64,000 nt of DNA from Lepidodermella squamata (taxonomy: Eukaryota; Animalia; Gastrotricha). How positions within the stretch are numbered: position 1 is the stretch's first letter; every line of letters starts with the position of its first letter. The notes under the pieces were generated by a model. That model saw only the letters and a list, made by a program, of their open reading frames with translations, was not told the DNA's origin and made no database searches. The stretch covers positions 434,001 to 498,000 of the forward strand of contig JBLDXI010000066.1 in the NCBI GenBank assembly GCA_047495785.1. Direction: 5' to 3'. Position numbers and translations under genes: made by a program. Shown one piece after another: positions 2,070 to 43,020 of the stretch.

Positions 2070-5000
2070 CATAGAGCGAAGTACTGCTAGGGATGGTAGG
2101 GATTATCCCTGCCAGTTCCATCGGTCCGCAAGGTGAGCTCAGACAAAGACCAAAGGGGGGACCCTTATGCTGATTTTTGTTCCGCGGTTCTACTTCGCTC
2201 TACGGTCTATGATTCGCACTATGGATCAAGAAATGTTCATAGTTGCGCCGGGTCCGTCTTGTCTTCGATTTCGCCATTTCCCTTGTTGGCGCTTGGTCGT
2301 CCATGATGTCGCCCATTACCGGCGCTTTGTCACTAATCAATTGAGTGGTTAAATGGTGACTTAATCGCATATGGGATGCTAAGCACCACAGTCATGCCAA
2401 TTTGCAAACAAGCTTATCGAGCAGGATCATGAAGATTTCAGCTACACTAACTACCTCGGCGATCATGGCTAGGCTCAGGAGGGAATGGAGGCTGTTTGTC
2501 GATGAATGAGGTCAAAACCAAAATTACAGCGTTTTGGACTCAAAAGCTAAGAACAACTCTCAGGCCAGCTGCCTAATCGCACTAGCAGTGGGCGACTTTA
2601 CATTAATGCCTAATAATAATAATACTTAAATTTTTTGCTATTGGATGTTCAAGAATAATATTTAAAAATTATAATTGTTATTATATTTACCACTGGTGCT
2701 AACAAACAATTGCTTCGCATCGTCCCCCACAACCAAGCTAATTTCGGATAGAATGTATGCTCAGTTGTCGACGAGTTAAAAATAAAACTGTCCATAAACA
2801 TCCTCAAGCTGCTCGATCATCCAAAGTTTCATCCAGTCATCCATCCGCTTTTCGTTTTAATTAAAATTGTCAATTAAAACCTTGGTTATGGCTTTCAGAC
2901 TGGCTGTTATCGCGGCGACATTAGGCATTGTCGTTAGTCGTAAGTTACCGTCTCTCTAATCCTTCCAAGGCTCATGTCGATTTCGTCTTTTCAGAAACAA
3001 CTGTCAGCCCTGCGAAGATTGTCGAATGCTCGACTGGAGTGAGCACGACCGACGCGTTCAATACCGACGGCATGCTGTACGATCTCAACTATCGGTATGT
3101 CTACTGCCCCGACGGCAGCTACCTGACCTCGTGGAAGCTCAAATTCACTCCGAATGCGTCTGCTTCGTCTGCCCAGTATGAATACAAGTGCTGCAAGGCG
3201 CCGTCTGTCGGAAAGTGCAGACAGGTTACGAACGACCTGACGGATGGTAATGGCTTTGCTGCTGTCTCCCTCGAAAAACAGGATATCAAGTGCAACGCGA
3301 ATGAGTTTCTGAAAGGCTTCCACCTGACCACATTGTGGAGTCAGATCAGGTTCAACTATGCATGCTGCCAGGTTAGTATCGAGATCGTGTACCAAATTTA
3401 CCTACGAGCTCGTCCCACTTTGGGGGAGGTTTCTGATGGCCAAGGCCTAAGAGTCCAGGAAACGTTCAGATTATCAGGCGCCATCTCACCATCTCACATG
3501 TTTATTTTTCATTTCCAGATTGAAGGCGAATTCGATGTTATTCCCAGGGCGCTAACAACCGATTACGACAAGGAAAGTAACAAAACGACGACCTTAGACC
3601 GCCACAATCTCGCCTGCGCGGACGGTGAGCTCATGCAGAGGTGGCACCTGCAACGCGATGTAGACCAGGGTATGGTGCGCTTTGAATACACATGCGCTAA
3701 AATCAATCTGCGTGAGTTGCAATCCGCACAAGACAGGTTTAAATTGAAAAATATTGCTTCTATGTAGCTCCGAAGTGGTACGAGAAGTGCTCTAATGCCA
3801 CCCTGAAAACCAGACTGGCCGATGACCCTGATGGCAAAACGTACCAGCTCAATTTGCAGACCGTGCAATGTCCCGAGAGGAACTATATCACTTCCTTCGG
3901 ACTGGCCAGGCCTAGCGCAACCACCGTCCAGTACGCGTACACGTGTTGCGCTGCCCCCATGATGCCGGTGTGCCGCGAAATCCAGAACGCTTGGACCCCT
4001 GGCTACTACGGCGACACCAACTTTCTGGACAGGCAAGCTGTCACATGCAAAGCTAACGAAGTCCTGAACCGATTTGTCCTAGTTACCGACCGTCTCACAA
4101 TTGCCGAAGGTTCAATTTCCTACTACTACACCTGCTGCTCGGTGCGAATTTCAGAATTCAAACTGCTACTGTTTTAATAAAATGTGTTTACAGGTCACAG
4201 GTAAGGTCACCACTACCAACCATGTGACTGATGAAATCGACCACAAGGGCAAAACGTTTGCTCTCGCCAACTACCGCCCGACCTGTCCCGACGGCAGGTT
4301 GCTGCAACAGTTTCAACTGAAGCGCGGTCCTGGCGGCAACCACCGATACGAGTACACCTGTGCTAAGGTCGAGGAGTGAATCGGACAAGAGGAGCAGGTT
4401 GCAGTTTAGTCGAGAAATTGATGGTAAATTATGGTTGAAGGGAATAAATCGTAATCATTCATTAATCGAGGCGGTTGATAGTCAGCAGATTAATGATCAG
4501 CGTTGAATAAAATATAACAAGACATAATGTGTGAACATTTTGATTCAGGAAGTCCTCCCATCTCGTGATTCCTAGTCACCCTCTTGTCTATCCTCTATTT
4601 ATTCGTACAGTTCTGAGCTAGCTTTCGACGCACGGTTTATAAGATTTTTCGACCTCCCGAAAACATACAAGGGATATTACGAAAAATTCCGGGCACTTGG
4701 AGCGTTAACAGAAACTTTGATCAACACTATGTCTAGCACCACCTGCGAGGAAATACTTCCAAACCATGTTGCTAATCACCTAGATAGCGTGGCGAATGCT
4801 GTCCCCAATGTGAGTCATGAAATATAAAGTAACTGTACCTATTTATTGATTCTCATGATTCTGATAATTGATCCTCATTTATTCAAAATATCTGTGAACG
4901 ATCTAGGCCTAGTTTTTAAACATCCGAAAATTGGCCGAAAATTCTTCGTAAAAATAAAAAAATACCACTCAGGGTGTATCTCAGGGAGCTCGAACTGACT

Positions 5001-5372
5001 GGGTTTGGTGTAATCCTAAAATCCGACTCCCTTTAACGAATGAACGATATCCAATTGGAATAAATCTATGCCTCTGACTCAACGAGAATCTGAACTTTCG
5101 AAGAAGCTCAATAATTTTAACGTTAATGTGGAGCCAATGTTGTTGTTGTTTTGTATTGTCAATATCAAAATGGACAAATGGAATTTGAACCGGACTGAAT
5201 TTAACTCTGATTTTTCTGCCGGCTATGAGTGGATTGCCCGATTAACATTGTTGTGAGCGTTCGGCTTAAGCTCTTAAATAAAAGACTTAAGCTCTTAAAT
5301 GAATGAATAAAAGCTTCCCTTATGTCGATTTTCCTTATCCCTATCAGTTCCGCGGTCCTACTTCGCTCTATG
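2070..5372. mobile_element. Non-autonomous 3.3-kb DNA transposon (hAT/P-type) carrying a complete host-like gene
   Basis: Perfect 14-bp TIRs: CATAGAGCGAAGTA (2070-2083) and TACTTCGCTCTATG (5359-5372). Perfect 8-bp TSD CTTCATTA at 2062-2069 and 5373-5380. No transposase seen inside. An internal second right end sits at about 2190-2204. Confidence 0.9.
2888..4379 (+). CDS. Secreted Cys-rich protein of about 393 aa with six ~50-aa repeats (two three-repeat domains; lectin- or dermatopontin-like organisation is inferred)
   Basis: Exons 2888-2939, 2995-3371, 3519-3711, 3768-4141 and 4194-4379 join in frame with GT-AG introns. Signal peptide MAFRLAVIAATLGIVVS. Repeat consensus T-x(8-10)-L-[DN]-x3-C-x5-L-x2-[FW]-x-L-x(7-12)-[YF]-x-Y-x-C-[CA]. 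AATAAA at about 4443. Confidence 0.85.
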
Positions 5373-6566
5373 CTTCATTATATCCAAGTTGTTAGCAAGC
5401 TAGACCGCTTCATTAATTTCCCTTCACCTACTTAATATCACAGGACCTTTGATAGCGGAGGAAAGATGAAAGCATGGATAGACGGCCCCTAATTTCGCGC
5501 AATTCTATACCACTCATCGTGAACTGAAAACTGAAGCGAATCAGCCCGCGGAGCAGTTCATGGCGGCCGGGTGGTGCGGAAGTTGGCCCATTTTCGACTT
5601 GGCATTTTCAGCTGAATCGACGGTAAAAAGCTCGCTTCAACCGCGAATATTACTTCACCAGGGTCCAATTTGACACTCGTCAGCAATTTTCATCATTTTG
5701 GGCTAAACATGAAGAGCAATTAAGTGTATTTGAACAGTCTAGTGAAGTTGAACAGTCTAGTTTAGGCGTTCAGGAGAAAAGCTTTAGAGCCGCTGAAGCA
5801 ATCGCTTGTCTTGATGGTAAAGGAAATTCAGAGTAGGGAGGATGTCAATCGTTCATAGAATTTCGAATGAACATCAATAAGAACCCAAGCGTGCAGTGAT
5901 TTAAGAAAAATAATCTACCATCGGTATGATTGAGAATTTACCAAAGTATTTCTGCATTGTTTCTACCGCATCAGATGAAAAAAACAAAAAGCGAGAAAAT
6001 CGCTGATGTTTTCAAAGCGCATCAATGTCAGACCGCGTTCACTGTTCGTTGACAGAAGGTTCAGCTTGAGAACATGAAATAAAGCCAGTGGAAGCTGTGG
6101 AATCGGCTTGAAGCAGCACTTCATTTATGGGCGTAATATTATAGGGTGGTAGTAAATCAGGTCGAAAAGTTATTAATAACATGAATCATCACTCACTATC
6201 GAAGAGGTATTGTTAGAGCATATACTATCGCATGTTTTTAATATTCAGCGCATCGACCACCTTAATGAATCAATAAAAGTGTCGACCGAAAAGTTCCTAT
6301 GTTCTCCAAGTATATTATAAGCAAGATGTCCAACCACCGCAGACAAAACGTCGTTAGCGACGCGCTAAAACAATGCTTCGATGACTCATTCGATCCTATA
6401 AGGAGCCTAACAAAATGATGCAATGCATTCAGTTTTTCGAGCACTAGTCGTGTAGATCATCATTTTAATTTACGTTCAAGTGTCTCACATTTCGTTAAAA
6501 GAACTAGAAATTATTAAGTTCTTCTTCTTTGGGACTTCTTTCGGTTCAACGCTATAACGATAAACA

Positions 6567-36372: not shown

Positions 36373-38128
36373 CTGAACGCTGAAGGCTGCGAAAGGGATT
36401 ACAGTGTGACTATCATTAATGTATTATGATGAAATTATGCGGTAATATCGCTGTGCGATAATTAACAATAATACCTGTGAGGTCATATGGATTAGGACTA
36501 TTGTAAAGAACAGGACTCAAGCTTGATATACAAGATTTACATGGTTTGCTAGCAAAGCCTTTGTTTTGTTCTCCGAAATAAACTGTCGGATTTAATAAAT
36601 GAAGAGTTATCTTCTTTTTCTTCTGATTTAGGCTCAGCTCTCGTCAGCAGATTTTTCCTCGCCCAGGCAAACTCCGGATGTTGCCATAAGACTGGTCTAA
36701 GGCTGGTTCGATGGCGTCTAAAGTTAATGACCAATGCCAGCCGAGAACAAAGTTTTTGATTCAGTGGTATCACAACGATGTTATTCCAAACAAAGTTCAT
36801 TCAAGTCGTCAATACTTTTTGCTCAATGTATAATTACGCTATTGTTAGCTTGACGGAATGCCTGTTAACGTCGATTGAGATGATGAAACTGGGTTAAATC
36901 ATGAGACGTAGGTAGGACGCGGAAGCTTGAACCCTGCCATGCTGACTGAAGTGTTGGCGTTTGAATACGCATGAATATTCTGCATATTTTACAGCTTGAA
37001 AAATAAAAATGACAGGGTTTAATAATTATATTAAAATAAATAATTACTGACAATTTGTATAAAAATTAGAAAGGTCAAGTTCTAAAAGCTACAGGAAACT
37101 GTAAGGTTCCATGGTAACCAGGCTGGATCCAGGTTCCCGGAAACCGTTCAGGTCAAGATCTTGGAGGACGATGGCAAACGATGGTCTAAACTGTTGGCTG
37201 ATGAACATGTTTGCATGACATGTTTTGGAATAAATTCCGCTTTGATTAATTGACACATGGCGTAGTTCTAGGTTTGTTACGCAATGAACCGGGAACACAG
37301 CCTAAGTAAAAAGTAATTCGTCTGCGAGTATTTTCTAGTGGATTTTCCTCAATTGATGAGTAAATCCCCATTGAAAGAAGGCCTGTTTTTTAAAGCGTCC
37401 CATCATTTATATCGCCCGTTTGTAGATCGGCCAAGTTTTGCCTGATTTCACCCCGAAGACAAGGCAATTGCAGCCTAGGCGATCGGCCACCAGATTGGCC
37501 ACCGGATTCTCAAATTTGACTGGAACTAGCTGCTATTCATGCTATTACATCGCAAAAATGCAGTTATTCTTTCGGCCTTTCAATTTACTGAGGCGAGTTC
37601 CAGCTAAAATGAGCCAAAAGCTGCTCATTTGCTTGTCAAGTTCGTCGACAAAACTGGAGCATAGATCTCAATTCAGCCCAGCCTAAGGTTATTTCAATCG
37701 TTTATTTATTTTTCTCTAGTCATGCCAACTTAAACTTTTTACCTGAAACATGAAAGTTAGGCGGGAGCTTATGCCGGATTTTTCATTTCGACTTTCGATT
37801 AGCTACAGTAACTAGCTAATAGAAAGCTGACAATTATTTCATTTATGAATAAGATTCCCGACTGCAGATTCAAGGGAAATTTCATGAATTTGCTATTTTT
37901 TCTGGGAATTTTCTGGATTATTCGTATAATTCAAGGGATTTTATTCAGCCACGTTGATTCCCGGATCCATTTTGTCACGAGGTCAACAAGCAACACAGAT
38001 ATTGGTTTTATTCAGCAATTTTATTTACAAAATAATTTGGATATTTGTTTCATCTCGCCCGAAGGCTCTGCCCGGTTTTTCACTTATAATGCTAAGCATT
38101 TGTTCGATTTAGCTATATTTTATTCTAA

Positions 38129-41100
38129 ATGTTACTGACCACATTGAATTTATTCTTTGTGGCTGTCTTCCTCGGCGAGGATCCTCTCGCCTTGCTGGAT
38201 TTGGGAGCTACGATTTTTAGCCTGGTTCTCATTGTCGTTTCAATTTCCCTGCTCGTCACTGGAGCTGTTCTCTTGTTTGCCTGTGTATGGATTTATTCCG
38301 GTAAAGGAGGGTGGCGAAAAGTCTTGTTATTCGCCATTCTATGCCAGGCTGGTACGGACTTTGACTACCAGCGAAACTCCATGAGAGTTTCGGATGAGCA
38401 ATACGAATGTTCGCATTCGCCGCAAATACTGTCGCATTCTTGCAGTTCGATGGATCTCGGGTAAATTAATCAAAAATTATGATATCCAACATGTTATTTT
38501 TCGATTTTTACGTGAAGCATCGGATCTTGTGATCCATTTGCATACAGCTACTTCAAAGCGACGTTGCTTTTGCGGAGTGGCGATGTAATTTATCTGTGGA
38601 ATTAAGACCATTTGAAAAAATATAATTTAACCTTGCTTAGGTTCAGTCGAACCCAGGCCCCGCGATAAAGTTCACGTCATTATCGCATGGCAAAAGCATT
38701 GCTAGTTCGAGCGGCCTAGCGTTACCCGGAAATACGTCTTGGCAACAGGAGGAAACGACACCTCGTGTACCTCATACCCGAAAAATCAAGGATGATACGT
38801 TACCTGGTAAAATATTTCTTCCCTTTATGATGGTAAGATGCATCCTAATGTTATAGAAATTCCGGAAAAACGAATTTTTGTCGAACAACCTGCTGCTGCT
38901 ATCATCCTTCAACCCAATTTCGCCACCAAGAGAGCCGCAATAGCAACAGCCGAAAATACTAGACTTTACGCGCCAACAGTCGCTGAATTGAGAGCGGCTG
39001 GATTTTCTGGTAAACCCGACGAAAATCTTCGAGTCGTTAGACTCACTCAAGCCAAAGGGAAACAGCGCATGGTGACGAATTCTACCTGTAAATCAAGCTG
39101 CGCATCCGTTGTGAAAGAAAATGCTAGATTGCGAAGGGAAAATCGATCATTGAGTAATACTCTGGCTACTTATCGAAGTAGAGCGAAAATGCGTAAAATC
39201 AAGTCGAAATGCCGGAAAAATCGTCGATTTACTAGCACTGCGACTCAAGCTGATATGCCTATCGAGATAGTCCACGCCCCGAAAAAGCACTTGACAAGTG
39301 ATGAGTTACAGGAACTGCTGACTCTTCAACACCGCCTTCGAAATATTGAATCAGTACATGCTATCAGGTATTCAAATAAAGCCGGCGAGATTCTCATGAG
39401 GGTAGCCTTAACAATCCACTCCATCAGTTCGAAGGCGTACGATTTTCTCAGAGATTCAGCAATCCTAATGTTACCTCACTCCTCCACCATTAACGCGGTC
39501 ACACCAGTCGATTACGAACCCGGAATTTCGGAAAGCTGCTTGATAATGCTCGCTGAACAAATCAAATCTTCTACTAAACCTGAAAGTTATCGACTGGGCC
39601 TGATATCATTAGATGCCATGTCAATATCAGGCGGCTTAGAGATTGTTGATAAGGGTAATACAATTGTGGGGATGTCCCTGGATGAACCTGGAACACCAGC
39701 TACGCAGTGTTTGTCCATCGTCCTGAAATATGTCGAAAATGTTACTACTGTAAACGTCGCCAATTTTCCAATGGTTAATATGCCTGTGGACAGAATTTCT
39801 CTTTTCTTGAAAAAGACAATCGAGAAATTGTTTCAATTGCCAACCCCAGTAATTGTTATCGCTGCGACGTGGGATGGCGCTGGAGAAAACTGGTCGTTGT
39901 ACAATGGCCTGGTAAAACACTTCGGATCTGATGGTTTTCCTCATCCTTTCGCTGAAGGCGTGAAAGTTCACCTGCTATTCGACCCGCCTCACATTTTGAA
40001 AATTTGTCGAAATGCTATAATTCATAAAAAGGTAGGCTCATGGGTTTCCTGAATGTCTTTCTAACGCCAATTTTTCTATGTGATTTTTTCAAATTAATAG
40101 ATTTGAAACGTAATTAAATTTAGTTTAAAAAAAATAAAATTTTAAAATTTTAAAAATGTTATATTTCAAACATACTTAATTAAAATTGAAAATAAACCAT
40201 TTAAAATAAAAAATTAGAATAAAATTCCTGGAAATATCTATAGGATAATTTTTTGAATTTCCAACTGTCATCCAATATTTTCACATTTTTTGTTATTTAT
40301 TGGACATTTTATTTGTAAAAATTTACAGTTGATCATCAACTTCGCAAATATCGACTGGCCTAAGTACTCAGCTGTGATGGAGCAGAAGCTAATCGATAAG
40401 TTTCCGAAAATTGGGAAAGGTCGTGTAAACTGGGCCTACATTGTTGAGATATTTGAGCGAGATCGTAATCGCCTCGTCCAAAGGAGCACCAAGCTATCTC
40501 GCCATAGTGTTTATGCCGTCCAACGGAAAAGTGCGCCACAAAAAATGAAAGTTTCGTATGCGGCCCAGACTTTGTCTCGTTCTGTTGCCATTGAAATTCT
40601 TCTTACTCACCCCGATGATTTGGACGCAGCAGCAACCGCGTTTTTTTGTCTTCTTATCGACGCGTGGTTTGATTGTTTCAACGGAGAGAGTAACTCCCAG
40701 GGTACGAGCAAGCCAGAATCCTACACCTGGAAGCCTAACCTGGCTCCATACGAAGACCCGAACGACAAAAGATTAATTTGGCTCTTGGAAACATTTGTGC
40801 CGTTGATCAAAACTATAAATGCTGATAACAAATCAGACAAAACCACTCTTTCCTGGCAGGCGAATCGAGCCTTAATCGAGACTTCTACCAACATGGCTGC
40901 TCTCATTAGATTCGCTTTATCGCAGGGTGTCCAGAGATTTTACCCAGCCAGGGCTAACCAAGACGCAAACGAAATGTTATTCAACCAGTTCCGGCGGGAC
41001 GGAAATTCTTCGAAATCAAATCCCACTTTTCGGGCAATTCAGAGACGTGCCGGCACATTGCGAGTTGCAGGTGGTTATTGGGGAGTTTCCCGCGGTGGTA

Positions 41101-41609
41101 ATGTGGAATCTAGGGGCGCTGTCGGATCCTTAGACTTGAAATGTGCCCGGAAATTGAAGAAAATGGCCTGGGAGAAGGCGAAGATGTCCAGTGTTCACCG
41201 GATTCATTTACCAAGCCACCTTACGTTTGACCATAATACAATCACTTGGATTGCGGGCTTCCTAACGAAAAAACTGGGCCTGAAACCAACCGATGCTTTC
41301 CACAGTGATTACGTGGAACTTCGATCGAGAGGCGGTGCCACCCAGCCAAATGGCGATGTTTTGTGCGTCGTTAAGGTCGCTCTGTCGGCCTGCTATCGAG
41401 AAGACCTTGTCATCTTCAAAAAATTGGACGATGTAGCCCTGCGTTTGGGACATCAAGTAACAAAAATTAAAGACAAATCTATAATTTTACCAATTTTATG
41501 CCGGCTTAAGTATATTCTTGCCCGAAGAACTGTACGATTTTATCGCGAGAAATTCGGGGCATCCTCTGTGTCTCTTCGCTCGAGCTTGAAACAATTCAAG
41601 AAGGACTGA
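38129..41609 (+). CDS. P-element (THAP9-like) transposase of about 1006 aa, preceded by a signal/TM module and a 2A-like peptide; no THAP domain
   Basis: Exons 38129-38460, 38518-38584, 38641-38806, 38857-40031 and 40329-41609 are phase-compatible and stop-free (3021 nt). P-transposase motifs LISLDAMSI, TWDGAGEN, FDPPHILKICRN, KMKVSYAAQTLSRSVA, WFDCFN, NQDANEMLF...NPT, WIAGFL, SRGG. The transposase identity is firm; the 5' exons are a manual model. Confidence 0.85.
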
Positions 41610-43020
41610 AAATTCTCTAATCTGTTGAATTCATCTCAGTTATGTGTTCAATTTATCGAATTCATCAAATTTTCAATTAGCCAATTAGTCTTCGATTTTT
41701 CCTCTTTATTTTCGGCTTTATTAACTTGAACTGTTTCACTTTTGAGACCTAGGCTTGGCAAATTGTGTTGCGAAATCTCATCAGCCTGATCTTTACTCTA
41801 CTGTACCACTTTATTTAGTTTCTTCGTATTTCATTTTCACGGCGAAATTAATGTAATATCCAATGGGAGAAGTGACATTGTTGTGTTTTATCCTTCCAAT
41901 TTTGAAAAGGCAGTCTAAATCTGTCGCATTGAGCAATTATTGTGGCGAAGTTTCAAATTTCCACGTCTCGATTTTTATTCAAGCGAAAAATAATAAAAAT
42001 AAAGAAAACGTGTTTTTATGAGCAGTTGACTCGTTGCCATATGGCGATCGGCGTGCAATTTAATGAGATGATTCATCTCATTATTTTCTCCAAGTGATCT
42101 TTGACCCTAATTATCTCTGCCAACACTTTTTTCTCGTAAACAACCCAGCTGCGGCGTCCTAGCTACGTCTCATGCTTTTTCCTGGTTTGAAATTACGACC
42201 GATGATGTATGATCATCCAACGGCTTTACAACAGCTGCTCGTTTCAAAGCAGCCATTGATTTAAATAAATTCTCCTGAAAAATATTTAGAAAAAAAACGG
42301 AATTGAAATTACTTTTGGGATAATAAAAAAATTAAAATGTACTTGTCTTTAGTTAATTTGAGCGCTTTGAGACGTGATGTATTGAGCTGTGATAAAAGCT
42401 TGCTATTCATGCCTCACTTAGCAACCTCGCACTTGAAAAACCCAGAAAAAAACCGCTAAGGTAATTCTCGCTCTGGGCAAACATGAAGCGGGAAAAATGA
42501 AAAAGCCAAGAATAATCTGAAAAATTGCTTCATTTTATTGAAAGGTGTCTAATAAATGAGCTATGAAAAAGGTAGAAAATTGAAAAATAGCTAAAAATAT
42601 CATCTATAGATGAGCGATTAGTTTCATCGAGCAGTCACGTTTCGTCGTTGTTGTTGTTGTTGTGATGGCGTTGTAGTAGTGGCGGGTGGCTTCTTCTCGG
42701 CTGGTTTCTTTCGCGGCCACAACGAGTACAAGATGATAGCATTTATCTCGCCAATGAGCTTGAATAAAAAATTAAAAAATATTAAGAGTTTTTTTGGAAA
42801 ATTTGGAAGTGTCATCGATATCGATTTTGCGCGAACCTGTGATCTAACCGCCGAAAGCATTTCGCATTTCGTAGTAAATCTCATATTGCCGATGAATTTT
42901 TTCTTTGAGAGCGGCTTCCTAGCTATTTCTCTAATCTATTAGTGTCAATTCGCGTATCACGTGACCGAAAAATGTGAGAATATAAAATTCTTGCTCCCCA
43001 ATTTTTTCTCTATACACAAA

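What the first reader, a model, noticed from the sequence alone, without database searches (positions are those of the whole stretch)
38129..41609. Membrane module - 2A-like ribosome-skipping peptide - intact P-element transposase in one spliced ORF
Seen: five exons splice in frame with canonical GT-AG introns into about 1006 aa. The N-terminus has a signal-like peptide (MLLTTLNLFFVAVFLG), a long TM segment, a second hydrophobic stretch and a Cys-containing spacer. It then reads YFKATLLLRSGD|VQSNPGP, a motif visible only after removing intron 38585-38640. A coiled coil and a P-transposase core with the D/D/E motifs intact follow, but there is no THAP zinc finger. Established: D(V/I)ExNPG-P peptides cause stop-go translation and occur in invertebrate non-LTR retroelements and NLR genes; P transposases normally begin with THAP. 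Inference: one mRNA could yield a ~139-aa membrane protein plus a ~867-aa nuclear transposase. The E-to-Q change may make skipping partial, leaving some transposase membrane-tethered as a built-in control. I do not know of this architecture in P elements. I found no TIRs, so the gene may be domesticated.
Basis: partly seen in the sequence, partly recalled or inferred. Interest (0 to 1): 0.92.

Follow-up and report, generated by a model that had tools for sequence, protein, structure and literature searches.

The report
P transposon with membrane leader and 2A
An apparently intact cut-and-paste (P-element type) jumping gene puts a greasy membrane peptide and a virus-style "ribosome-skipping" 2A site, formed only after an intron is removed, in front of its transposase. 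I found this layout described for retrotransposons and immune genes but not for DNA transposons.

Summary
Exons 38129-38460, 38518-38584, 38641-38806, 38857-40031 and 40329-41609 splice GT-AG into a 1006-aa ORF. It encodes a hydrophobic leader, then YFKATLLLRSGD|VQSNPGP split by intron 38585-38640, then a THAP-less P transposase with an HTH, an RNase H core, a GTP-binding insertion and an intact D441/D528/E795 triad.

The gene lies in a 5,275-bp element (36900-42174) with 28-bp inverted repeats starting CATGAGACG. That terminus occurs about 147 times in the genome. Sister copies carry 8-bp target duplications. So this is a transposon, not a domesticated gene.

Five further diverged lineages in the same genome (52-79% identical transposases) keep the leader, the mini-exon ending LLLL(R/Q)(S/C)GD, the phase-0 intron and (V/I)(E/Q)xNPGP. 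Their codons differ synonymously. Leader dN/dS is about 0.2.

Whether the ribosome actually skips is untested, because no RNA data were available. Published E14Q mutants keep 26-56% activity, so partial separation is plausible.

The scan had already noted this family on other DNA of this genome (s1-401898, s1-373955). This window holds an apparently intact copy. I rate it a new variant of known kinds.

The parts
36900..42174 (+). Whole P-superfamily DNA transposon, 5,275 bp
   Evidence: Homology to the C24 copy (98.7%) and the C29 copy (76-90% in patches) starts exactly at 36900. Homology to C29 ends at 42174. The two ends are inverted repeats of each other.
36900..36927 (.). Left terminal inverted repeat, CATGAGACGTAGGTAGGACGCGGAAGCT
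   Evidence: It matches the reverse complement of 42147-42174 at 25 of 28 positions. The 21-mer core occurs 147 times in the genome (up to 2 mismatches) against 0 for the control.
42147..42174 (.). Right terminal inverted repeat
   Evidence: Contig depth jumps to about 3,246 at 42043-42200 against about 40 inside the element, so the subterminal sequence is high-copy. This copy has no matching target-site duplication: GGTTAAAT on the left, CTTTTTCC on the right.
38129..38460 (+). Exon 1: hydrophobic leader. It has a signal-like N-terminus, a TM-grade stretch at residues 18-59, the basic/hydrophobic WRKVLLFAILC segment and a Cys-containing spacer.
   Evidence: dN/dS against the C29 copy is 0.17-0.21. 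No Pfam family matches. The protein atlas gives only weak hits to TM fragments.
38518..38584 (+). Exon 2: mini-exon ending ...YFKATLLLRSGD, the N-terminal half of the 2A-like peptide
   Evidence: The same mini-exon ending LLLL(R/Q)(S/C)GD occurs in the C29, C25/C46/C60, C4, C16 and C7 lineages.
38585..38640 (+). Intron 2 (56 nt, GTAATT..GCTTAG, phase 0), which splits the 2A motif between D and V
   Evidence: The position is conserved in all nine copies examined, with introns of 53-64 nt. Unspliced reading gives ...GDVIYLWN followed by a stop.
38641..38806 (+). Exon 3: VQSNPGP (2A C-terminal half, 38641-38661; predicted skip between the G139 and P140 codons) plus a conserved KFTSL..PGNxSWQ..PHxRKIKD linker
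   Evidence: (dN/dS 0.16). Exons 2 and 3 contain no ATG.
38857..40031 (+). Exon 4: linker, coiled coil (39108-39203), Tnp_P_element HTH (about 39282-39494), RNase H N-terminal half (about 39516-39911), with catalytic D441 (39612-39614) and D528 (39873-39875)
   Evidence: Pfam, alignment to 6p5a, residues invariant in the paralogue alignment A1, coordinates.
40329..41609 (+). Exon 5: GTP-binding insertion domain (about 40413-40700), RNase H C-terminal half with catalytic E795 (40971-40973), the C-terminal domain and the stop codon
   Evidence: Pfam GBD E 3.5e-14. NQDANE aligns to NQDIVE (E531) of 6p5a. dN/dS 0.03.

Best explanation
SHOWN. Window 36900-42174 is an apparently intact, autonomous-type P-superfamily DNA transposon. 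Its single spliced gene encodes three parts in one frame:
- a 139-aa hydrophobic, membrane-type leader;
- a 2A/StopGo-type peptide at the leader's C-terminus, which is assembled only when intron 2 is spliced out;
- an 867-aa THAP-less P transposase with an intact D/D/E triad and a GTP-binding domain.
The layout is ancestral to a set of diverged lineages in this genome and has been kept by purifying selection. At least two of these lineages have moved recently.

INFERRED. During translation the Leu-rich tract and GDVQSNPG in the ribosome exit tunnel block formation of the G139-P140 bond. The leader is released and probably inserts into the ER membrane as a small protein with a cytosolic tail. 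The same ribosome continues and makes a free transposase that begins with proline and can enter the nucleus. Position 14 is Q instead of E here, so separation is probably partial. The unseparated fraction would be a leader-anchored transposase kept out of the nucleus. Because the motif exists only after splicing, unspliced or mis-spliced transcripts would yield only a truncated leader and no transposase.
For: - Gene model and motif.
- P-transposase domains and catalytic residues.
- TIRs, copies and TSDs. The TIRs are 28 bp and the terminus has 147 genomic matches against 0 for the control. The C24 copy is 98.7% identical with a different left flank. The C25 and C46 copies are 99.9% identical at different loci, with TSDs CTTAACTT and GAAATTTG. 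Internal-deletion derivatives exist.
- Conservation across lineages: C29 has LLLRSGD|VESNPGP, C25/C46/C60 have LLLLQCGD|IQLNPGP, and C4 and C16 have LLLLRSGD|VERNPGP. The intron position is the same and the Leu, Arg, Ser, Gly, Asp, Asn and Pro codons differ synonymously. The conserved residues (L6, L7, G11, D12, V/I13, N16-P19) are the ones that mutational scans find essential for StopGo (bioRxiv 10.64898/2026.09.24.754024; PMC12846837).
- Selection: leader dN/dS is 0.17-0.21 and exon 3 is 0.16, with saturated dS.
- Start codon: exons 2 and 3 have no ATG, so the conserved exon 3 can only be translated from the leader's start.
- Leader hydrophobicity: four of the five leaders examined have a TM-grade hydrophobic segment.
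- Activity of similar peptides: E14Q retains 26-56% activity (PMC12846837). A sea-urchin peptide...LLLRSGDVEQNPGP, scored as skipping in a high-throughput assay, and one natural DIQLNPGP peptide did as well.
Against: - There is no RNA evidence. The only public run that holds this sequence is genomic and its contigs retain the introns.
- Skipping has not been measured. Q14 lowers activity, and one DIQLNPGP peptide in the screen did not skip.
- The C7 lineage reads VERQPGP (N16Q), which is probably inactive, yet its transposase frames are open.
- The only foreign relative found (L025, 51-55% identical) begins at a similar TIR and shows no leader or NPGP in its 1.25-kb 5' region.
- This copy lacks a target-site duplication.
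- Leader topology rests on hydropathy alone. The AF2 model was uninformative (pLDDT 46).
Confidence: 0.62

Rival explanations
1. The leader-2A cassette is mainly a translational damper. Stalling or fall-off at the Leu-rich 2A lowers the amount of transposase, limiting damage to the host. The leader peptide has no function of its own.
For: [quoted passage not shown] The motif here is very Leu-rich (LLLL/LLL). Transposons generally benefit from limiting their transposase dose (established knowledge).
Against: The 110-180-aa leader upstream of the roughly 20 residues needed for StopGo is under purifying selection (dN/dS about 0.2). It keeps TM-grade hydrophobic segments and a basic-hydrophobic motif across lineages. 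A pure damper would not need either.
Confidence: 0.2
2. No skipping occurs. The protein is made as a fusion and the 2A-like string is a relic. The leader acts as a signal or anchor, so the transposase is membrane-bound until some other cleavage frees it.
For: Q14 (this copy, C25/C46) and Q16 (C7) weaken or kill canonical 2A activity (PMC12846837; bioRxiv 10.64898/2026.09.24.754024). One natural DIQLNPGP peptide scored as non-skipping.
Against: The residues essential for StopGo are precisely the ones conserved, through synonymous codon turnover, in lineages whose leaders are otherwise only 20-60% identical. Three lineages have the canonical DVExNPGP. A relic would have decayed at saturated dS.
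Confidence: 0.08
3. The leader and 2A exons are not part of the transposase mRNA. The transposase starts from an internal ATG, for example 38838 inside intron 3, which is in frame with exon 4.
For: ORF 38838-40052 starts with an ATG in the exon-4 frame. The C29 copy has an ATG just after its 2A (GIMKFTSL).
Against: The 38838 ATG is not conserved in C29, which reads LYENFLEIPEKR there. Exon 3 is conserved coding sequence with no ATG of its own in this copy. The leader and 2A exons lie inside the TIRs in every lineage and splice in frame.
Confidence: 0.06
4. It is a domesticated, immobile host gene derived from a P transposase.
For: This copy has no target-site duplication. The gene is intact and under purifying selection.
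Against: The element has TIRs. A 98.7% identical copy lies at another locus with a different flank. The terminus has 147 genomic matches, including short paired derivatives. Internal-deletion derivatives exist. Sister lineage copies with distinct 8-bp TSDs are 99.9% identical.
Confidence: 0.03

Closest known systems
Drosophila P element / THAP9-type (P superfamily) transposases (structures 6p5a, 6pe2)
   Same: - HTH, split RNase H fold with a GTP-binding insertion domain, and the D/D/E triad.
- A coiled coil precedes the HTH.
- TIRs of about 30 bp that begin CATGA.
- 8-bp TSDs in sister copies.
- Internal-deletion derivatives.
   Different: - There is no THAP zinc finger in any frame of the element.
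- The N-terminus is replaced by a membrane-type leader, a 2A site and a roughly 130-aa linker that the low-confidence model left unresolved.
- Sequence identity to the fly protein is very low (E 0.013).
2A-like sequences in the N-terminal region of APE-type non-LTR retrotransposon ORFs (L1Tc, Ingi, CR1, Crack, L2, Rex1; PMC3708506; bioRxiv 10.64898/2026.06.17.732966)
   Same: - A mobile element places a class-A (Leu-rich, GD(V/I)ExNPGP) peptide near the start of its enzyme ORF.
- Variants at the E position occur naturally, for example CR1-20_NV ES->QL.
- This genome also has such a non-LTR element (L028:5061-8462).
   Different: - Here the host element is a class II cut-and-paste transposon.
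- The motif is split by an intron.
- A 110-180-aa hydrophobic leader lies upstream.
- In the text and supplement portions I could read, the surveys list no DNA transposase.
'2A-like' signal sequences of sea-urchin NLR proteins giving dual protein targeting (Roulston et al. 2016, PMC4981915)
   Same: - An N-terminal hydrophobic targeting element is combined with StopGo.
- Skipped product is cytosolic and non-skipped product follows the leader's targeting.
- The ratio is set by point changes in the motif.
   Different: - There the roughly 20-30-aa 2A-like peptide is itself the signal sequence.
- Here a separate long leader with TM-grade segments precedes the 2A.
- The cargo here is a transposase.
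- Nothing about this element has been tested experimentally.
Picornavirus 2A (FMDV F2A) and its E14Q mutants
   Same: The core G-D-V-x-S-N-P-G-P with upstream Leu residues. The window copy is in effect a natural E14Q form.
   Different: - It is encoded by a cellular, intron-containing gene.
- The upstream context is LLLRSGD rather than LLKLAGD.
- Its activity is unknown. E14Q in F2A keeps 26-56% activity (PMC12846837).

Membership tests
P superfamily DNA transposon | Transposase with P-type HTH, RNase H fold and GTP-binding insertion domain | tested here: met
   Pfam PF12017 (30.5 bits, cut-off 23), PF21787 (29.3, cut-off 24.6) and PF21788 (53.6, cut-off 24.8).
P superfamily DNA transposon | Catalytic D, D, E triad | tested here: met
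   SLD441AMS and TWD528GAGEN align to D230 and D303 of 6p5a. NQDANE795 aligns to E531. All three residues are invariant among the paralogues.
P superfamily DNA transposon | Terminal inverted repeats of about 30 bp | tested here: met
   36900-36927 against 42147-42174, 25 of 28 matching. The C29 copy matches at 27 of 28.
P superfamily DNA transposon | 8-bp target-site duplication | tested here: inconclusive
   Absent at this copy (GGTTAAAT against CTTTTTCC). Present at C25 (CTTAACTT) and C46 (GAAATTTG). C29 has a 9-bp direct repeat.
P superfamily DNA transposon | N-terminal THAP (C2CH) DNA-binding domain | tested here: not met
   No Pfam THAP hit. No C-x2-4-C-x30-60-C-x2-H pattern in any of the six frames of 36900-42174. 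A distant P-like family in the same genome (L010) also lacks it.
2A / StopGo peptide (class A) | C-terminal N-P-G|P in frame with downstream sequence | tested here: met
   NPGP at residues 137-140 of the spliced ORF.
2A / StopGo peptide (class A) | Core D-(V/I)-E-x-N-P-G-P | tested here: not met
   This copy has DVQSNPGP, with Q at position 14. C29, C4 and C16 have the canonical DVE(S/R)NPGP.
2A / StopGo peptide (class A) | Upstream Leu-rich tract and G at position 11 | tested here: met
   ATLLLRSGD here, and LLLL(R/Q)(S/C)GD in the other lineages.
2A / StopGo peptide (class A) | Demonstrated failure to form the Gly-Pro bond (two products) | not testable with these tools
   This needs translation or reporter assays. 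No RNA or protein data were available.
2A-like dual-function signal sequence (Roulston type) | The 2A-like peptide itself is the N-terminal signal sequence | tested here: not met
   The 2A ends at residue 139. The signal-like and TM segments are at residues 1-16 and 18-59, separate from the 2A. This element may work like the Roulston type but it is not a member.

The most novel reading that the evidence does not exclude
A DNA transposon family uses a membrane leader plus a tunable StopGo site as a built-in partitioning switch. The skipped product is free nuclear transposase and the non-skipped product is ER-tethered and inactive. The two lineages with signs of recent transposition (C66/C24 and C25/C46/C60) carry Q14, a substitution that attenuates canonical 2A, through different codons (CAG and CAA), which suggests two independent changes. 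In addition, the hydrophobic-leader plus intron-split-2A cassette would be a shuffled exon module, since unrelated genes in this genome (C1, C9, C28) carry ...L(L/I)CGD|IExNPGP with an intron at the same place.
Probability: 0.25. Interest if true: 0.88.

Novelty: new variant of a known kind. Interest (0 to 1): 0.78.

Why it matters
[quoted passage not shown] I found no report of one in a class II transposase.

Here the site is conserved across diverged lineages, and at least two of them moved recently. It is preceded by a selected membrane-type leader, and it forms only after splicing. That gives a natural system for three questions:
- how a transposon controls the dose and location of its own transposase;
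- how attenuated 2A variants (Q14) are used in nature;
- whether 2A cassettes spread between genes by exon shuffling.

It also yields new natural 2A contexts (LLLRSGDV(E/Q)SNPGP, LLLLQCGDIQLNPGP, LLLLRSGDVERNPGP) for the 2A toolbox. It shows that motif searches on unspliced DNA or poorly annotated genomes will miss intron-split 2A sites.

Tried and rejected
- RNA evidence. The one public run holding this sequence (X1) consists of genomic contigs that run through the introns, so it says nothing on splicing or expression.
- Cross-species relatives.
  - An exhaustive HMMER search with exon 4 gave only one close cluster: P0001, 51% identical, a 3.1-kb Logan contig.
  - None of the 150 best hits contains NPGP or QPGP.
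  - P0001's contig starts at a related TIR and shows no leader or 2A.
  - A word-based search with exon 5 found nothing at E <= 1e-10.
  - An ML tree leaves the foreign relative in a polytomy with the two 2A-bearing subclades, so gain and loss cannot be told apart.
- Structure. AF2 on the post-2A N-terminus plus core (alignment A1, 6 sequences) gave mean pLDDT 46, with residues 1-104 unresolved. I ran no fold search, and I make no claim about a replacement DNA-binding domain.
- Leader identity. There is no Pfam family. The protein atlas gave only 0.86-score hits to MatE-like TM fragments, which means generic membrane character and not homology.
- Literature.
  - Full-text searches for 2A-like or StopGo together with DNA transposon or transposase found nothing relevant.
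  - The supplement of the eukaryotic screen is stored truncated. In the held part, 'transposase' appears only as LINE-1 ORF1p names, and our peptides are absent.
  - The Cell Reports supplement is not held.
  - Absence from the literature is therefore not proven.
- Domestication is rejected on the TIRs, the copies and the TSDs.
- A separate upstream host gene is rejected because the leader exons lie inside the TIRs in every lineage.
- Procedural notes. 
Full report
**What is in the sequence**

Reading 37500-42300 and joining the proposed exons gives one open frame of 1006 codons plus a stop. The exons are 38129-38460, 38518-38584, 38641-38806, 38857-40031 and 40329-41609. All four introns are GT-AG: 57, 56, 50 and 297 nt.

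The string YFKATLLLRSGD ends exon 2 and VQSNPGP opens exon 3. The 2A-like peptide therefore exists only in the spliced message, with NPGP at residues 137-140. If intron 2 is not spliced, the frame reads ...GDVIYLWN and stops.

The leader has three hydrophobic features:
- a signal-like segment at residues 1-16;
- a long TM-grade stretch at residues 18-59, with a peak 19-residue Kyte-Doolittle score of 2.88;
- a basic-hydrophobic segment, WRKVLLFAILC.

**The transposase**

Pfam assigns exon 4 to the Tnp_P_element HTH and the TNP-like RNase H N-terminal domain. It assigns exon 5 to the TNP-like GTP-binding insertion domain. All three matches are above the curated cut-offs.

Against the solved Drosophila P transposase (6p5a), SLDAMS and TWDGAGEN align to the D230 and D303 motifs. 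NQDANE aligns to NQDIVE, which contains E531. In the full protein these residues are D441, D528 and E795, and they are invariant among the paralogues.

There is no THAP domain. Pfam gives no hit, and no C2CH pattern occurs in any of the six frames of the element. A distant P-like family in the same genome (L010, about 30% identical) also lacks THAP. It starts with its own basic N-terminus and has no leader or 2A.

**It is a transposon, not a domesticated gene**

Comparison with other copies shows that homology begins exactly at 36900 and ends at 42174. The two ends are 28-bp inverted repeats, CATGAGACGTAG(G/C)TAGGACGC....

The 21-nt terminus occurs 147 times in the 121-Mb genome (up to 2 mismatches) against 0 for the reversed control. 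Many hits are +/- pairs 0.4-2.6 kb apart, which indicates MITE-like or deleted derivatives. Contig depth over the right subterminal region is about 80-fold that of the interior.

Evidence that copies have moved:
- A 98.7% identical but deleted and truncated copy sits on C24 with a different left flank.
- The C25 and C46 copies of a sister lineage are 99.9% identical, lie at different loci, and are flanked by 8-bp duplications CTTAACTT and GAAATTTG.
- The C29 copy has a 9-bp direct repeat at its ends.
- Two C73 loci join part of the leader exon directly to the 3' end, which is the classic form of an internal-deletion derivative.

The window copy itself has no matching target duplication. I cannot explain this.

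**Conservation of the leader-2A layout**

A search of the genome with exon 4 finds diverged relatives at 79% (C29), 65% (C25/C46), 55% (C7) and 52% (C4) identity, plus a decayed C16 copy. Each has, upstream and in frame, a hydrophobic leader exon, a short intron, a mini-exon ending in GD, a 53-64-nt phase-0 intron, and an exon opening with the second half of the motif:

| Lineage | Motif across the intron |
|---|---|
| C66 (this window), C24 | LLLRSGD / VQSNPGP |
| C29 | LLLRSGD / VESNPGP |
| C25, C46, C60 | LLLLQCGD / IQLNPGP |
| C4, C16 | LLLLRSGD / VERNPGP |
| C7 | LLLLQCGD / VERQPGP |

The codons for the conserved Leu, Arg, Ser, Gly, Asp, Asn and Pro residues differ between lineages. Conservation is therefore at the peptide level.

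The retained positions (L6, L7, G11, D12, V/I13, N16, P17, G18, P19) are the ones that the cryo-EM structure and deep mutational scans identify as essential for StopGo (PMC12846837; bioRxiv 10.64898/2026.09.24.754024).

Between the window and C29 copies dS is saturated. dN/dS by segment is:
- leader: 0.17-0.21;
- exon 3: 0.16;
- exon 4: 0.14;
- exon 5: 0.03.

Four of the five leaders examined contain a TM-grade segment; the C7 leader does not reach the threshold. The leaders share a basic cluster followed by a hydrophobic LL-rich motif.

Exons 2 and 3 of the window copy contain no ATG. The conserved exon 3 can therefore only be translated from the leader's start codon.

Genome-wide, AG|[V/I][E/Q]xNPGP occurs 11 times against 0 for the control, and 8 of those sites are in this family.

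**State of the copies**

- Window (C66): all frames are open.
- C46: transposase frames are open.
- C29: a roughly 970-bp MITE with an 8-bp TSD sits inside leader exon 1.
- C25: internal deletion.
- C7: N16Q in the 2A motif.
- C4: no second half of the transposase within reach.
- C16: carries stop codons.
- C24, C60 and C73: deleted derivatives.

**How it most likely works**

Shown: the architecture, its conservation and the mobility of the family.

Inferred from established 2A biology: the ribosome fails to form the G139-P140 bond and releases a 139-aa leader. It then continues into an 867-aa transposase that begins with proline.

The leader's hydrophobic N-terminus and TM segment, together with positive charges after the TM (K59, R63, K64), suggest a small membrane protein with a cytosolic tail. 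The continuing ribosome would then make cytosolic transposase that can be imported into the nucleus.

Published E14Q mutants keep 56% or 26% of activity (PMC12846837). No E14 substitution except E14H reached 0.6 in the F2A and P2A scans. Natural DVQSNPGP and DIQLNPGP peptides occur in a eukaryotic screen, and one DIQLNPGP peptide scored as skipping while another did not.

Partial separation is therefore the most likely outcome for this copy. The unseparated fraction would be leader-anchored. This parallels the dual targeting shown for sea-urchin 2A-like signal sequences (PMC4981915).

The two lineages with evidence of recent movement (C66/C24 and C25/C46/C60) both carry Q14, through different codons (CAG and CAA). 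This is suggestive, but it rests on only two cases.

The main rival is that the cassette chiefly lowers transposase output. This fits the report that most retrotransposon-associated 2A-like peptides reduce protein abundance.

**Limits**

- No RNA data exist for this organism in the resources I could reach. The single run is genomic.
- The family is almost absent from protein databases.
- The one foreign relative lacks the cassette, and its place in the tree is unresolved.
- The structure model was too poor to use.

**Comparison with what is known**

The element is a P-superfamily member by transposase domains, catalytic triad, TIRs and the TSDs of sister copies. It fails the THAP criterion.

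The peptide is a class-A 2A-like sequence with a non-canonical Q14 in this copy.

[quoted passage not shown] I found no report of one in a DNA transposase in the texts and partial supplements available. That does not prove absence from the literature.

The scan had already flagged this family on two other pieces of the same genome (s1-401898, s1-373955). I re-derived the result independently here. This report adds:
- the apparently intact copy and its TIRs;
- selection estimates;
- the MITE-disrupted C29 copy;
- the Q14 pattern in the recently mobile lineages;
- further non-P genes with the same intron-split 2A.

**Verdict**

This is a real, well-supported and unusual architecture, and a new variant of known kinds. 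The StopGo mechanism is plausible but untested.

Noticed in passing
L027 (G000:C9:3387000-3396900, minus strand, 2A acceptor at C9:3393278-3393299); L028 (G000:C28:106000-115900, 2A at C28:109310-109331); L026 (G000:C1:4936000-4945900, 2A at C1:4939549-4939570): Three non-P genes carry the same intron-split 2A: MRLPVLFAVNLLQLCGD|IESNPGP, ...FFNWLLLCGD|IEANPGP and ...FLLLICGD|IESNPGP. The C9 and C28 genes continue into related 430-480-aa ORFs with no Pfam family, and the genome holds about 7 diverged matches to them. This may be a shuffled leader-2A exon module.
   Followed up: partly
L028:5061-8462 (+): A non-LTR retrotransposon ORF (APE endonuclease-like, 1134 aa open) carries a degenerate N-terminal 2A-like peptide, MRGFILILLLISGVQPNPGP.
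   Followed up: no
G000: C2:1720945, C15:2777444, C42:2172366, C7:3991258, C10:322697, C33:2002418, C55:1993668: Seven contiguous (unsplit) GD-I-E-x-NPGP coding sites occur in three sequence types, against 0 for the control. I did not determine which genes hold them.
   Followed up: no
L018 about 4722-5690 (G000:C29, inside leader exon 1 of the C29 copy): An unrelated MITE of about 970 bp (ends CAGCGTAGAAAGTAGG...CCTACTTTCTACACTG) with an 8-bp duplication GCTGGAGC interrupts the leader exon of the C29 paralogue.
   Followed up: partly
window 42043-42200; genome-wide TIR hits: The right subterminal ~130 bp is very high-copy: contig depth is about 3,246 against about 40. A variant terminus, CATGTGACGTAGATAGGACGC, forms many +/- pairs about 420 bp apart, which indicates MITE families probably mobilised by this transposase clade.
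   Followed up: partly
L015 (G000:C73:240531-243708), L016 (G000:C73:279356-282440), L029 (G000:C60:138000-141500): Internal-deletion derivatives. They join part of the leader exon, or the 2A exon, directly to the 3' end of the transposase gene, in the manner of deleted P elements in flies.
   Followed up: partly
window 36892-36899 and 42175-42182: The apparently intact window copy has no target-site duplication (GGTTAAAT against CTTTTTCC), although sister copies do. This is unexplained; ectopic recombination between copies or a flank rearrangement is possible.
   Followed up: partly
window 38838-38840: An ATG inside intron 3 is in frame with exon 4. It could start a leaderless 795-aa transposase if transcription began internally. 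It is not conserved in the C29 copy.
   Followed up: partly
L010 (G000:C24:1516298-1520056, minus strand): A distant P-like family (about 30% identical) in two long ORFs. It also lacks THAP and has no leader or 2A, and it starts with a basic MPRKPKSK... N-terminus. It is a useful internal control.
   Followed up: partly
L025 (Logan contig from SRR21620664, 3148 bp): This is the only close foreign relative (51-55% identical). The contig begins with a related terminus, CATGTGACCTACCCAGGACGC, and shows no leader or NPGP in the 1.25 kb upstream of the transposase. The source organism is unknown to me.
   Followed up: partly
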